64,000 nt of DNA. It comes from Mobula birostris. Lineage: Eukaryota. Positions 4,922 through 63,952 of this stretch are shown here, piece after piece. How positions within the stretch are numbered: the first letter of the stretch is position 1; each line of letters opens with the position of its first letter. Both the position numbers and the translations under genes were made by a program. Under the pieces are notes generated by a model that saw nothing but the letters and a program-made list of their open reading frames with translations, made no database searches and was not told the origin of the DNA. The DNA is taken from contig NC_092393.1 of assembly GCF_030028105.1 (NCBI RefSeq), positions 37,363,248 to 37,427,247 of the forward strand, in the 5' to 3' direction.

Positions 4922-5190
4922 CCATAAGACCATAAGATATAGGAGCAGAAGTCAGCCATCCGGCCCATCGAGTCTGCTCTGCCATTCAATCATGGGCTGA
5001 TCCGATTCTTCCGGTCATCCCCACTCCCCTGCCTTCTCCCCATACCCTTTGATGCCCTGGCTAATCAAGAACCTATCTATCTCTGCCTTAAATACGCCCA
5101 GTGATTTGGCCTCCACAGCCACTCGTGGCAACAAATTCCACAGACTTACCACCCTCTGATTAAAGAAATTTCTCTGCATCTCAGTTCTAA
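4922..5190 (-). mobile_element. CR1 LINE 3' fragment
   Basis: ORF2 C-terminus [33 protein letters not shown], and a (TCTTATGG)n tail. Confidence 0.9.
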
Positions 5191-55854: not shown

Positions 55855-55995
55855 ATCTCTCCACTTTCTGCAGGGATCTCAGGGATCTGTGATTATCTTA
55901 TCCATTCATCCCTCCCCACTAATTTCCCCCCTGGCACATACCCCTGCAAGCGACAGCAATGCTACACCTGCCTATTCATATCCTCCTTTACCTTC
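55855..55995 (+). mobile_element. PLE linker fragment (PGTYPCKRQQCYTC)
   Basis: Homologous to YPCKRKCYTCPY at about 59030. Confidence 0.65.
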
Positions 55996-56129
55996 TGCTG
56001 TGGCTGTTGGTGCACGGACCTTGGTAGATACCAGATCTGTTTTCAATCAATCCCATCTCGAGCAACAGTAATAAAGGTAGAATTTTTTTACAGAGGTCTA
56101 TGTGGTTTAACTTCACAGTACTTAGCTGG

Positions 56130-56690
56130 TAGGGGTGTATGGGGTGTCAGGGAGGGGTAGCACCTCCGGTGATGGAACATGTCGTGTCCTTTTCAAGGCA
56201 GTTAGTCCACCTTTGGTCCCCACCTGGCACTCAGCTCTCACCTGTGGCTCCCCGTAGCTGTTTGCATGCGACAGCGGCCACACCCTGGGCAACGGCTTCG
56301 ACAAGCCAGCTAAACCAGGTGAGGGTAGCCGACAGGTCTCAAACCCTCGGTGAGATAGGGAGTTGTCTATCCCAGCATGTGAAGACAGACTCCGGCAGAT
56401 TGAGCGGACGAGACCAATGGAAGATCCAACGGTCAAGAAGGCGGTCTCTGCAAGCGTCGTGGAACATGTAGAGCAGGACAAGACACAGAAGAAGCCCTGG
56501 TCATCCACTGCACCTAGTCCCATCTCCAGCCGTCTCGACTCTGTCTTGCCACTGGATCCAGATGGGAATTGGGAAGAGAGAGTGAGGCTGACACTGTGCA
56601 ACTCTTCCTCACTTGAATCCAAGTCACGCACTAGACTCAACACCATAATGGTGTCGAGGTCCTCATCGACGTTGGCGATGGACAAACACA
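56130..56690 (+). mobile_element. 561-bp non-coding retroelement (probably an RTE-derived internally deleted element) with 7-bp TSD
   Basis: TAGCTGG at 56123-56129 and 56691-56697; CpG-rich; no Pol III boxes or TIRs seen. The RTE affiliation is recalled similarity, not verified. Confidence 0.7.
56132..56325 (+). ncRNA. Putative HDV-like ribozyme at the element 5' end
   Basis: P1, P1.1, P2, P3, P4 and J4/2 GCTAA can all be assigned in canonical order (see findings). Confidence 0.6.
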
Positions 56691-57574
56691 TAGCTGGAAA
56701 AACTGCTGTCCTGGCAATTGCAGGAAAGTGGTAATTTATATATATTAGGGGGAGGGTTTGGGGATTGAAGGGGTTTGAAGCAGGTCGTCATGAAGCAGAG
56801 CCAACTGTTTGCAAATGTCTGAAAATAAGTCAATAATGAAGTTCAGCCAGTTAGAATAAATGCTGTAATCATAACTTTTAAAGCTTCAAACCATTTTGGA
56901 ATTGTTACACATTATTCAACGGAGTGATTTGTGAAGTGACAAACACAGACAGCCTATGGGGCCACAATATCCTTTCTTGCATGAATTATTGAAGAGTAAA
57001 AAGCCAGTCTGGCAACACACTTAACATACCTATTTAAACTGAAGTGTAGTCTTGCAGTAAGTATGGAGGGGAGTACATTTGTCAATTAATTTATCTTTTC
57101 AGAAACAAACATCAAAAGATTTTCCAGCTGTCTAACCATTCATTTCACAGTTGCAAGAGGTTAATAGAGGCAAATTAAAAGGATGCCAAATCTCAGTAGA
57201 ATCTAGATGGAATTGGTTTCAAACTCAGCAATGACCTGAATCCAACTTCCACTTTTCTCTGCAAGTTGTCAAATGTATTTGCACCCACAGCAAACACCAA
57301 GAATAGCTTGAACAATGAGAAAGTTTAGAAATAACAATCTGGAATTCCTTCTGAAATGCTGTTGGTATTGGAGTAGTAAAGCATTTGGTAAAGAATAAAT
57401 CAGGTTATCACTTCACATCTTACATAAAAATGCTGCACTTGGATGATCCTAGAAAAATCTAAAGGTTGTGATTTTGGCGATATATAAATGAAATAAAGGT
57501 TGACTTCAGTTTCTCTCTCCCCAAAATTTCATAGCATTATTGCACCACAAAAGCAGCAATGAGAGAGAGCTCCT

Positions 57575-62361: not shown

Positions 62362-63952
62362 AGTGGTCTCAGTATTTGAAGATGATGTGTGGGCTGCCTT
62401 CAGGAGAGTGAATCCAAGGAAAGCATCCAGTCCAGACAGAGTACCTGGCCGAGTACTGATTACTTGTGCCCAAATCCGGCTGCTGTGTTCACAGATACAG
62501 TATCTTCAACCTCTCGCTCCAGCAGTGTGTCGTACCCACCAGCTTCAAGCAGGCTTCAATCATACCTGAGCCAAAGAAGAGTGTGGTAACCTGTCTAAAT
62601 GACTATCGTCCAGTGGCACTTACGTCCACAGAGATGAAATGCTTTGAGAGGCTGGTTTTGAAGCATATCAGCTCCTGTCTGAATGGCGACTTGGATCTCC
62701 TCCATAGCAACAGGTCTATTGCAGATATTATCTTGTTGGCTCTTCACACAACCCTGGAACATCTGGACAGCAAAGATGCATACATAAGGATGTTCCTTCT
62801 CGACTACAGCTCGGTATTTGGTACCATCATCCCCCCAAAACTAATCAGTAAACTCTAAGACCTGGACCTCAATACCACCTTGTGCAGTTGGATCCTGGAT
62901 TTCCTCACTTGCAGACCCCAGTCAGTTCGGATTGGCAAAAATATCTTCTCCACCATCTCCATCAGCACAGGAGCACCACAGGGATGTGTAGTTAGCCCCC
63001 TCCTCTACTTGCTTTACACCGATGACTGTGTGGCTGAGTACAGCTCCAAACCATATTTGCTGATGACACCACTGTTGTGGGCCGTATCAAAGGTGGTGAT
63101 GAATCAGCATACAGGAGGGAGATTGAAAACTTAACGGCGTGGTGTAATAACAACAACCTCTCACTCAATGTCAATAAGACCAAAGAACTGATTGTAGACT
63201 TCAGGAGAGGGAAACCAGAGGTCCACGATCCAGTAATCATCAGAGGATCAGAGGTGCAGAGGGTCAGTAACTTTAAATTCCCGGGTTTCTCTTTCTCAGA
63301 GGACCTGTGTTGGACCCATCATATGGCTATAATTGGGAAGAAAGCCCGACAGCACACTTACTTCCTCAGGAGTCTGCAGAGGTCTGGCATATCATCAAAA
63401 GCTTTGGCAAACTTCTACAGATGTGTGGTGCAAAGTGTGCTGGCTGCATTACAGCCTGGTATGGGGAGACAAATGCCTTTGAGTGAAAAATCCTACAAAG
63501 GGTAGTGGATGCAGCTCAGTACATCACGGGTAAAACCCTCCCAACCATTGAGCACATCTACGTAAAATGTTGCCGTAGAAGAGCAGGATCCACCATCAAA
63601 GATCCTCACCACCTAGGCCATTCTCTTTTCTCACTGCTGCCATCAGGTAGAAGGTACAAGTGCCTCAGGACTCACACCACCAGGTTCAAGTACAGTTCCC
63701 ACCCTCAACCATCAGGCCCTTGAACAAAAGGGGATAACTACACTCATTTAAGGACTCTGTTAATTTGTTATTTCATGCTTGTTATTTAATGCTATTTATT
63801 TATATCTGCATTTGCACAGTTTGTTTACAGTTAACAGTTCCTGATGTTTACAGTTTACAATTACTGTTCTGTAGAATTGTTAAGTATGCCTGCAGTAAAA
63901 TAATCTCAGGGTGACATGTATGTATTCTGATAATAAATTTTGCTTTGAACTT
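62362..63952 (+). mobile_element. Rex1-like LINE RT fragment
   Basis: [58 protein letters not shown]; AATAAA..TTTGAAC end. Confidence 0.9.

What the first reader, a model, noticed from the sequence alone, without database searches (positions are those of the whole stretch)
56130..56690. Short non-coding retroelement whose 5' end is an HDV-like ribozyme fold with an unusual hairpin inserted in L3
Seen, in canonical HDV order: P1 5' GGGGTGT (56132-56138). A long J1/2 is closed by GGGTGTCAGG 56142-56151 / CCTGGCACTC 56223-56232. Then come P2 5' CTCTCACCTG (56235-56244), P3 5' GGC (56246-56248), L3 starting TCC, P3 3' GCC (56277-56279) and P1 3' ACACCCT (56280-56286, giving a G1-U wobble). These are followed by GG (56287-56288, P1.1 with the L3 CC), P4 GGCTT-CGAC-AAGCC (56294-56307), J4/2 GCTAA with candidate catalytic C56310, and P2 3' CAGGTGAGGG (56316-56325). 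The predicted cleavage site is only 2 nt from the left TSD (TAGCTGG), so the element begins where the ribozyme would cut. Atypical: L3 is 28 nt rather than about 7 and contains a hairpin, GCTGT 56257-56261 / ACAGC 56271-56275. Established: R2 and RTE elements use 5' HDV-like ribozymes. Inference: a promoter-less, ribozyme-released SINE-like parasite of an RTE LINE carrying a structural variant that standard descriptors would not find.
Basis: partly seen in the sequence, partly recalled or inferred. Interest (0 to 1): 0.85.

Follow-up and report, generated by a model that had tools for sequence, protein, structure and literature searches.

The report
Ribozyme-headed short copy of ray LINE
A 559-base jumping-gene copy in a manta-ray genome begins exactly where a hepatitis-delta-type self-cutting RNA fold would cut; that arrangement is already known for this kind of element, but here the fold has an extra hairpin in its catalytic loop, and cutting has not been tested.

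Summary

- **What it is.** A non-autonomous, internally deleted derivative of an RTE-type LINE. It keeps about 500 nt of LINE 5'UTR plus a roughly 60-nt tail, spans 56132-56690, and is flanked by TAGCTGG (9 bp with one mismatch).
- **Abundance and 5' end.** The family is very abundant in three ray organisms. In the two best-sampled runs, 97 and 98 contigs with unlike AT-rich flanks stop matching exactly at G56132, the predicted cut site.
- **Partner LINE.** The same head sits at the 5' end of a full-length LINE (endonuclease plus reverse transcriptase, 1090 aa) on a metagenome contig. Between the two, the ribozyme core is 83% identical and the J1/2 interior 43%.
- **Pairing evidence.** P4 covaries directly. 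Codon-inferred letters from 74 related ORFs suggest compensatory changes in P2, P4 and the L3 hairpin. P1, P3 and P1.1 hardly vary.
- **Corrections.** The G1-U wobble is a CpG mutation of this copy (the family has C). The long structured J1/2 and long P2 are known from mosquito RTE ribozymes. Only the L3 hairpin is unusual.
- **Limits.** Rfam finds nothing, and cleavage is untested.

This scan has already flagged and followed up the same family elsewhere in this genome. Verdict: a new variant of a known kind.

The parts
56123..56131 (+). Left target-site duplication: TAGCTGG (7 bp perfect), or TAGCTGGTA (9 bp, one mismatch to the right copy)
56132..56690 (+). The element: a non-autonomous deletion derivative of an RTE-type LINE (5'UTR plus short tail), 559 bp
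   Evidence: Family contigs stop matching before 56132 (97 in X1, 98 in X5) and behind 56690 (71 in X5). Alignment to the L001 LINE 5'UTR.
56132..56138 (+). P1 5' strand GGGGTGT. The predicted cleavage is 5' of G56132.
56139..56234 (+). J1/2 peripheral domain (P1.2-like long hairpin, 96 nt). It is closed by 56142-51 / 56223-32 and contains a second GGGGTGT unit at 56141-47.
   Evidence: The minimum-free-energy folds of the window copy and of L001 both form it. The interior is only 43% identical to L001.
56235..56244 (+). P2 5' strand CTCTCACCTG
   Evidence: codon-inferred compensatory changes
56246..56248 (+). P3 5' strand GGC
56249..56276 (+). L3, 28 nt. UCC 56249-51 (its CC forms P1.1), G56254 (candidate partner of U56249 in the reverse wobble), then the inserted hairpin 56257-61 / 56271-75.
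56277..56279 (+). P3 3' strand GCC
56280..56286 (+). P1 3' strand ACACCCT. T56286 is a change specific to this copy; the family majority and L001 have C.
56287..56288 (+). GG of P1.1
56293..56308 (+). P4 hairpin. It has 5 bp in this copy and 6 bp in the family majority, where 56308 is G.
56309..56315 (+). J4/2 GCTAAAC with candidate catalytic C56310
   Evidence: C kept in the codon-inferred lineages
56316..56325 (+). P2 3' strand CAGGTGAGGG
56326..56630 (+). Rest of the LINE-5'UTR-derived body
   Evidence: Alignment A1 to L001 5146-5480: 47-69% identity by segment
56631..56690 (+). Short 3' tail with a small hairpin. It resembles the sequence just after the stop codon of the L001 LINE. Family depth here is about 10-fold lower than in the body.
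56691..56699 (+). Right target-site duplication: TAGCTGG(AA)

Best explanation
The element at 56132-56690 is a non-autonomous, internally deleted copy of an RTE-type LINE. It keeps about 500 nt of the LINE's 5'UTR joined to a roughly 60-nt 3' tail. Its first 194 nt fold as an HDV-like self-cleaving ribozyme of the 'large' type, with:
- a 7-bp P1;
- a roughly 96-nt structured J1/2 domain;
- a 10-bp P2, a 3-bp P3 and a 2-bp P1.1;
- a short P4;
- J4/2 carrying C56310;
- one unusual feature, a 5-bp hairpin inserted in the 3' part of L3, after the conserved U-C-C-N-N-G.

Inferred mechanism:
1. Master copies are transcribed as part of longer host or read-through transcripts.
2. The ribozyme cuts 5' of G1 and so defines the RNA's 5' end.
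3. The tail is recognised in trans by the LINE's endonuclease/reverse transcriptase.
4. Target-primed reverse transcription gives full-length copies with 7-9-bp target-site duplications.

What is shown is the anatomy, the family-wide 5' end at G56132, the same head on a full-length LINE, and conservation with partial covariation. What is inferred is cleavage, co-transcription and trans-mobilisation. The window copy itself is an old insert, at least about 4% from the family majority. It carries two CpG transitions in the fold (56286, 56308), and neither should destroy it.
For: - Every helix is present at the stated coordinates.
- The descriptor hits nothing else in 128 kb of window or 22 kb of L001. 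The random expectation is 2-208 per Mb, depending on strictness and base composition.
- Of 9476 (X1) and 12011 (X5) family contigs laid, 97 and 98 have loose ends lying just before 56132, with low-agreement AT-rich flanks (0.39, 0.37). That means independent insertions beginning at G1.
- L001 carries the same head at 4941, about 790 nt upstream of a 1090-aa ORF with Exo_endo_phos and RVT_1 domains.
- Identity to L001 is 16/16 in the two 5' units, 43% in the J1/2 interior, 83% in the core and 47-69% downstream.
- P4 has one compensatory pair (G-C to C-G) and one one-sided change between the two sequences. The L3 hairpin keeps 4 aligned pairs, one with a one-sided C-G to U-G change; its fifth pair falls on an alignment gap in L001.
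- A second ray subfamily has a P4 of CCGCTT/AGGCGG (loose ends behind 56285).
- Codon-inferred letters from 74 related ORFs give states with both sides changed that can still pair at 5 of 10 P2 pairs, 4 of 6 P4 pairs and 3 of 5 L3-hairpin pairs.
- Both J1/2 domains fold as long hairpins closed by GGGUGU/GCACUC.
- Nested parts plus the P2 duplex come to about -81.6 kcal/mol before any pseudoknot penalty, against a minimum free energy of -79.5.
- Literature: HDV-like ribozymes at RTE 5' ends; a structured J1/2 plus long P2 activates drz-Agam-2-1; the L3 G-U reverse wobble is conserved.
Against: - There is no Rfam match up to E = 10 for the window head or for the L001 head.
- Folding energy is ordinary (z = -0.55 and -0.82).
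- P1, P3 and P1.1 never vary between the two DNA sequences, which says nothing for pairing.
- In the codon-inferred set those three helices show no reliable compensatory change, and they show 11, 14 and 7 broken cells. Across all helices 112 cells are broken.
- With both sides changed, 23 of 33 states can pair at the true partner. One of six slid controls is as high (13 of 17 at -2); the other five are lower.
- A 28-nt L3 has no precedent that I could find, and it could abolish catalysis.
- A sharp family 5' end is also what a fixed transcription start would give.
- The 'RNA?' run shows no end at 56132, and contigs cannot show RNA ends anyway.
- The descriptor was written after seeing this case.
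Confidence: 0.68

Rival explanations
1. The head is a conserved structured 5'UTR element of the LINE with another role, such as binding of the LINE protein, translation initiation or an internal promoter. The HDV-like threading is a coincidence. The sharp 5' end is then a transcription start.
For: - P1, P3 and P1.1 show conservation but no covariation.
- Other blocks of the 5'UTR are conserved too.
- Rfam is blank.
- Folding energy is ordinary.
- P2, P4 and the J1/2 hairpin are all part of the ordinary nested minimum-free-energy fold, so their covariation does not need a pseudoknot.
Against: - The canonical order of all five helices is present. So are UCC...G in L3, GG directly after P1, C two nucleotides after P4, and a P1 that starts on the very first base of the family. 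That combination is expected at one fixed position about 2e-6 to 2e-4 times.
- The arrangement is the published one for this LINE clade.
Confidence: 0.22
2. It is a relic. An ancestral canonical HDV-like ribozyme was inactivated by the hairpin insertion in L3, and the family has spread without cleavage, for example from a promoter gained upstream or inside.
For: - L3 is 28 nt against the usual short loop.
- I found no known active example with such an insert (literature searches).
Against: - The hairpin is kept in the distant L001 LINE.
- It shows codon-inferred changes on both sides at 3 of its 5 pairs.
- The surrounding core stays 83% identical while its neighbours drift to 43-47%.
- This family with the insert is the very abundant one.
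Confidence: 0.08
3. The conservation reflects a protein encoded on the minus strand. The 189-aa ORF at 56122-56691 spans the whole element.
For: - The ORF covers the full element.
- There were 4 hits in one protein search and 65 in the other, including Mobula 'uncharacterized protein' models.
Against: - No Pfam family matches.
- The homologous stretch of the only full-length LINE, L001, has no long minus-strand ORF, only pieces of 25-85 aa.
- Relatives switch frame along the element.
- The databases hold only open frames, so finding them is expected.
Confidence: 0.02

Closest known systems
drz-Agam-2 family: HDV-like ribozymes of mosquito (Anopheles gambiae) RTE elements
   Same: - An HDV-type double pseudoknot.
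- A large base-paired J1/2 domain (P1.2) joined by short linkers, and an extended P2 (12 bp there, 10 bp here).
- The reviews read here place HDV-like ribozymes at RTE 5' ends. That drz-Agam-2 in particular maps to RTE elements is my recollection of Ruminski et al. 2011, which was not held.
   Different: - Here a 5-bp hairpin is inserted in L3, making it 28 nt.
- There is a tandem second copy of the P1 5' strand.
- Rfam 15, searched whole, gives no match; I recall but did not confirm that it holds a drz-Agam-2-2 model.
- The host is a cartilaginous fish.
- Activity is untested.
R2 5' ribozyme and its SIDEs (short internally deleted elements)
   Same: A non-autonomous element made by internal deletion of the LINE keeps the 5' ribozyme and the 3' end and rides on the LINE's proteins (passage in PMC6765202).
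   Different: R2 is specific for 28S rDNA and is cut out of an rRNA co-transcript. This family is dispersed, with ordinary target-site duplications, and belongs to another LINE clade.
L1Tc / NARTc of Trypanosoma cruzi (Pr77 / L1TcRz)
   Same: An autonomous LINE and its short non-autonomous partner share a 5' HDV-like ribozyme (abstracts in the listing; passage).
   Different: That is a compact 77-nt ribozyme that doubles as an internal promoter. It is in a different clade and a different host kingdom.
Canonical HDV and CPEB3 ribozymes
   Same: - The same helix order, with the cut at the first base of P1.
- U and G of L3 available for the reverse wobble, and CC/GG for P1.1.
- C in J4/2.
   Different: - L3 is 28 nt instead of a short loop, and J1/2 is 96 nt.
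- G1 pairs with C, not U, in the family majority.
- No covariance-model match.

Membership tests
HDV-like self-cleaving ribozymes | Nested double pseudoknot with P1, P2, P3, P1.1 and P4 in the canonical order, P3 3' strand abutting P1 3' strand | tested here: met
   Every helix fully paired in the window copy. The same helices are in L001. The descriptor hits only these heads.
HDV-like self-cleaving ribozymes | Cleavage 5' of the first nucleotide of P1 | tested here: inconclusive
   The family's DNA 5' ends coincide with G1 (97 and 98 contigs). This fits cleavage but also fits a fixed transcription start. No RNA ends could be read.
HDV-like self-cleaving ribozymes | Catalytic C in J4/2 | tested here: met
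   C56310 lies two nucleotides after P4. It is kept in L001 and in the codon-inferred lineages. Its role is not tested.
HDV-like self-cleaving ribozymes | Short L3 carrying U...G (reverse wobble) and the C(s) of P1.1 | tested here: not met
   UCC and G are present and conserved (UCCCCG here, UCCACG in L001). L3, however, is 28 nt with an inserted hairpin.
HDV-like self-cleaving ribozymes | Match to a curated covariance model (Rfam HDV-like families) | tested here: not met
   No match up to E = 10 in 56000-56800 or in L001 4850-5300, and none at gathering score in the whole window.
HDV-like self-cleaving ribozymes | Covariation supporting the helices | tested here: inconclusive
   P4 covaries directly. 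P2, P4 and the L3 hairpin covary indirectly through codon-inferred letters. P1, P3 and P1.1 are invariant or broken. One slid control is as good as the true pairing.
HDV-like self-cleaving ribozymes | Self-scission in vitro or in vivo | not testable with these tools
Non-autonomous internal-deletion derivative of an RTE-type LINE | 5' end shared with the LINE's 5' end | tested here: met
   It aligns from base 1 to about 56630 with the 5'UTR of the L001 LINE. That LINE is from another, unnamed organism; a ray LINE was not in hand.
Non-autonomous internal-deletion derivative of an RTE-type LINE | 3' tail shared with the partner LINE | tested here: inconclusive
   The tail resembles the hairpin sequence after the L001 stop codon by eye. 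It aligns poorly in A1, but there it was aligned to L001's 5'UTR; L001's 3' end was not in the alignment (34%). The ray partner's tail was not seen.
Non-autonomous internal-deletion derivative of an RTE-type LINE | No endonuclease or reverse-transcriptase coding capacity, target-site duplication, many copies | tested here: met
   No Pfam family for the only long ORF. tblastn with the L001 LINE protein found nothing in the window. TSD shown. Thousands of family contigs in three organisms.
RTE clade of LINEs (for the L001 partner) | Single ORF with N-terminal AP-type endonuclease and reverse transcriptase, very short 3'UTR; clade placement by RT phylogeny | tested here: inconclusive
   The architecture fits. 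No phylogeny with named clade references was made. The name RTE rests on architecture, on the tail (recalled resemblance) and on earlier notes of this scan.
Pol III SINE (tRNA, 5S or 7SL head) | Head derived from a small RNA gene with an internal promoter | tested here: not met
   ARAGORN finds no tRNA. Rfam finds no small-RNA family.

The most novel reading that the evidence does not exclude
The heads of this RTE lineage, in ray elements, in an unnamed eukaryote's full-length LINE and in dozens of unnamed contigs, form a conserved and active subclass of HDV-like ribozymes. In this subclass a helix is inserted into the catalytic loop L3, after the U-C-C-N-N-G core. The P1 5' strand is present twice in tandem, so that one copy forms P1 while the other closes the J1/2 domain, or the two serve as alternative cut sites 9 nt apart. 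Current covariance models and descriptors miss this subclass.
Probability: 0.45. Interest if true: 0.6.

Novelty: new variant of a known kind. Interest (0 to 1): 0.48.

Why it matters
If the head cuts, the HDV fold tolerates a whole helix inside its catalytic loop. That widens the search space for this ribozyme class, because Rfam models miss this head. It would also give a natural system for asking what L3 geometry catalysis needs.

For genome biology, it would explain how a very abundant ray retroposon family gets a precise 5' end without a small-RNA head of the pol III kind (no tRNA or Rfam small-RNA match; promoters were not tested). It would also extend ribozyme-headed RTE elements, known from insects, to cartilaginous fish.

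If it does not cut, this is an ordinary deletion derivative of a LINE with a conserved, structured 5'UTR.

Tried and rejected
- **More DNA copies.** blastn of the element against the window found no second copy. A gap pattern (P2 5' strand, gap, J4/2 plus P2 3' strand) found nothing in viral contigs or genome contigs and one contig in metagenome contigs, L001. The search for related loci with the L001 LINE protein found nothing in viral contigs or genome contigs. With a 22-protein alignment it again found nothing in viral contigs.
- **Fetching contigs behind related ORFs.** I therefore inferred letters from codons, which is lossy. Third codon positions are unknown. Ungapped tblastn pieces can be out of register near indels. 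Many ORFs come from decayed copies.
- **Protein profile.** I considered a protein-level profile of the plus-frame ORF. I dropped it because ours and L001 change frame inside L3.
- **Taxa.** Names behind 10 related ORFs: none given.
- **L001 boundary.** The TSD search gave one 12-mer with one mismatch, 14 nt upstream of the head and 257 nt after the stop codon. I take it for chance, because the RTE-like tail ends right after the stop, but I could not settle it.
- **Other ribozyme classes and small RNAs.** No Rfam match.
- **Minus-strand protein gene.** Rejected.
- **Literature.** I found no paper that links HDV-like ribozymes to shark, skate or ray RTE elements. 'HDV-like' plus 'shark' gave 2 papers, both unrelated to RTE by title and abstract start. 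'ribozyme' plus 'RTE' plus 'skate' gave 0. 'HDV-like ribozymes', 'SINE' and 'RTE clade' (at least two of the three terms required) listed 15 of 48 papers, none of them holding 'HDV-like ribozymes' together with 'RTE clade'. One search was a badly posed search that returned RTEL1 papers and gave nothing. Ruminski 2011 and Webb 2009 are not held, so I know them only through the reviews. I did not ask for supplements; lists of HDV-like ribozymes in supplements could already hold L3-insert variants.
Full report
**The observation.**
- P1 GGGGTGT 56132-38 pairs with ACACCCT 56280-86: 7 of 7 pairs, one G-U.
- A 96-nt J1/2 is closed by 56142-51 / 56223-32: 10 of 10 pairs.
- P2 56235-44 pairs with 56316-25: 10 of 10 pairs.
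- P3 is GGC/GCC. P1.1 is CC/GG.
- L3 is 28 nt and holds the hairpin GCTGT/ACAGC.
- P4 is GGCTT-CGAC-AAGCC.
- J4/2 is GCTAAAC, with C56310.
- The direct repeat TAGCTGG flanks the element. Read as 9 bp with one mismatch, it abuts G56132 and A56690.

**Is it more than chance?** The fold's free energy is ordinary (z = -0.55). Rfam 15 finds nothing up to E = 10. I wrote an HDV-type descriptor after seeing this case and widened it for the long L3 and J1/2.
- In the window's 128 kb (both strands) it hits only 56132 and 56141, the two copies of GGGGTGT. In L001 it hits only the homologous head.
- In 1 Mb of random sequence it gives 2-6 strict or 22-208 loose hits.
- A hit on one given base is therefore expected at about 2e-6 to 2e-4.

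**What the element is.** There is no second copy in the window, no tRNA and no small-RNA family.

I laid Logan contigs of four runs on 55950-56850 at 80% likeness. Thousands of family contigs matched in three organisms: 9476, 12011 and 6390. A fourth run, guessed to be RNA, gave 242.
- Summed contig depth rises from single-copy level to 10^5 at the left end of the element and falls back at the right end.
- The best-supported loose ends lie 'before 56132' in 97 contigs (X1) and 98 contigs (X5). Their flanks are AT-rich and agree poorly (0.39, 0.37), so these are many independent insertions that all begin at G56132.
- X5 also has 71 contigs with loose ends 'behind 56690'.

Organism B has both junctions of this very insertion (records 25 and 32). 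In organism D one contig matches the left flank up to 56129 and then runs on for 123 letters that do not match the element. This fits an empty site, but I could not confirm it.

**The autonomous relative.** A pattern built from the two P2 strands found one metagenome contig, L001.
- At 4941 it has the same start (GGGGTGTATGGGGTGT...) and the same fold.
- About 790 nt downstream lies a 1090-aa ORF with AP-endonuclease and reverse-transcriptase domains.
- Right after the stop codon comes a short hairpin tail of the kind I recall from RTE elements.
- The window element aligns with this LINE's 5'UTR from its first base to about 56630, and then has its own tail of about 60 nt.

It is therefore an internal-deletion derivative and not a SINE with a foreign head. 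The 10-fold lower family depth over 56601-56693 fits this: body and tail have different copy numbers. The closest named relatives of its ORF are from amphioxus (62-63%) and a catfish (61%). The minus-strand ORF of the window element matches Mobula birostris and M. hypostoma models, which agrees with earlier notes that call this genome a manta ray.

**Direct evidence for the fold.** Identity between the window copy and L001, by segment:

| Segment | Identity to L001 |
|---|---|
| Two 5' units | 16 of 16 |
| J1/2 interior | 43% |
| Core 56223-56325 | 83% |
| Next 75 nt | 47% |

- Both J1/2 domains still fold as long hairpins closed by GGGUGU/GCACUC.
- P1, P2, P3 and P1.1 do not vary between the two sequences. 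P4 has one compensatory pair and one one-sided change. The L3 hairpin has one one-sided change.
- A second ray subfamily, seen as loose ends behind 56285, has a P4 of CCGCTT/AGGCGG, again compensatory.

**Indirect evidence for the fold.** I used their translations instead. The set was 10 plus-frame proteins, 63 minus-frame representatives (65 were found, 2 dropped) and 2 further hits, P0002 and P0004 (P0001 and P0003 were among the 65). That made 74 proteins, laid on the window by ungapped tblastn. Each codon then gives the set of letters it allows.
- Of 1556 pair cells, 1260 need no change, 104 have a compatible one-sided change, 34 are changed on both sides and can still pair, 46 would need a change at a silent partner position, and 112 are broken.
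- The both-sides cases fall on 5 of 10 P2 pairs, 4 of 6 P4 pairs and 3 of 5 L3-hairpin pairs.
- P3 has none. The two in P1 are unreliable.
- One P2 case can be read from both strands' frames of what looks like one lineage: 56317 A to T from the plus frame, and 56243 T to A from the minus frame.
- Counted as distinct states, 23 of 33 both-sides changes can pair at the true partner. With slid partners the figures are 7/18, 13/17, 3/19, 9/16, 7/20 and 6/17. The number is highest at the true partner, but one control has as high a fraction.
- I read this as suggestive support for P2, P4 and the L3 hairpin. It gives no support either way for P1, P3 and P1.1.

1. Position 56286 is C in the family majority (for example 112712 of 128708 depth units in X1), in L001, and in the Mobula and other ORFs that show it. 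The ancestral state is therefore G1-C, and T is a CpG transition of this copy. The same holds for 56308 (G in the majority), which adds a sixth pair to P4.
2. [quoted passage not shown] The long J1/2 is therefore not atypical.
3. The L3 hairpin is the real oddity. It follows U-C-C-N-N-G, so the U and G of the conserved reverse wobble (PMC3774820, section 12) and the CC of P1.1 are kept.

**Energetics.** Enforcing P1, P1.2, P3, the L3 hairpin and P4 gives -65.8 kcal/mol. The P2 duplex adds -15.8 before any pseudoknot penalty. The nested optimum is -79.5. The double pseudoknot is therefore competitive but not favoured, and the competing TGTGGC/GCCACA helix is real.

**What is known.** Passages in a review (PMC6765202) and in the R2 ribozyme paper (PMC3774820) make three relevant points.
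- HDV-like ribozymes sit at the 5' ends of RTE, R2, R4/Dong and L1Tc elements.
- Baggins and RTE elements lack their own promoters and are co-transcribed.
- Internally deleted non-autonomous R2 copies (SIDEs) keep the ribozyme.

The primary paper (Ruminski et al. 2011) is not held. My searches found no paper on such ribozymes in sharks, skates or rays, and none mentioning an insert in L3 (by listing only).

**Earlier notes of this scan.** The same family had already been flagged in other pieces of this genome. Follow-ups called it a ribozyme-headed deletion copy of an RTE LINE with an extra hairpin in the catalytic loop (s1-145255) and a well-supported but expected example (s1-145449). My results agree. 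They add the non-ray full-length LINE with the same head, the family-majority corrections, the indirect covariation and the tandem P1 unit.

**Verdict.** This is a real, well-delimited, ordinary kind of element carrying a plausible but untested structural variant of a known ribozyme. I put about 0.9 on the deletion-derivative reading, and about 0.7 on the head being (or having been in its master copies) a working HDV-like ribozyme.

Noticed in passing
window 56132-56147; L001 4941-4956: The P1 5' strand GGGGTGT is present twice, 9 nt apart, in the window copy and in the distant LINE. Both registers satisfy the HDV descriptor. In another species' copies the two units read GGGTGTCAG twice. Four plus-frame ORFs cross into unlike flank just before unit 1, and one (P0127) starts at unit 2. 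This could mean two alternative cut sites, or one copy for P1 and one for closing the J1/2 domain.
   Followed up: partly
window 56122-56691, minus strand: A 189-aa ORF spans the whole element on the opposite strand. It has no Pfam family. Its relatives include 'uncharacterized protein' gene models of Mobula birostris and M. hypostoma, and 65 cluster representatives. These are probably retroposon-derived open frames that entered annotations.
   Followed up: partly
window 56252-56253: The L3 variant CC to AA holds 16-26% of family depth in the three DNA runs but 73% in the run guessed to be RNA. A particular subfamily may therefore be the expressed one.
   Followed up: no
window 55992-56129 and about 56738-56850: In organism D one contig matches the left flank up to the last base of the left TSD copy, then continues for 123 letters unlike the element. 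Organisms A and B have the insertion. This is a possible empty orthologous site that would date the insertion (record 9).
   Followed up: no
window 56208-56252: In organism B, contigs 'go back' from 56246-56252 to 56208 with 17-23 other letters in between (depths 90-291). This suggests a subfamily with a tandem duplication of the P2 5' / P3 5' segment (table 5c).
   Followed up: no
window 55950-56011: A different repeat lies just upstream of the element's flank. Summed depth is 300-1600 there, against about 5-7 in the single-copy flank.
   Followed up: no
window 62466-63505, plus strand: Two ORFs have weak matches to RVT_1 (below its cut-off) and to ALKBH8_N (above its cut-off). This is a fragment of another LINE, unrelated to the L001 ORF by tblastn.
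   Followed up: no
L001 326-4744, minus strand: Upstream of the LINE, the metagenome contig carries ORFs that look to me like a tyrosine-recombinase (DIRS-like) retroelement: 275, 402, 193, 125, 145 and 250 aa. I judged this from the translations only and ran no family search. It marks the contig as eukaryotic.
   Followed up: no
L001 4915-4926 and 9262-9273: A 12-mer repeat with one mismatch lies 14 nt before the head and 257 nt after the stop codon. If it were the true TSD, the LINE copy would carry 14 extra 5' letters and a longer 3'UTR. I think it is chance.
   Followed up: partly
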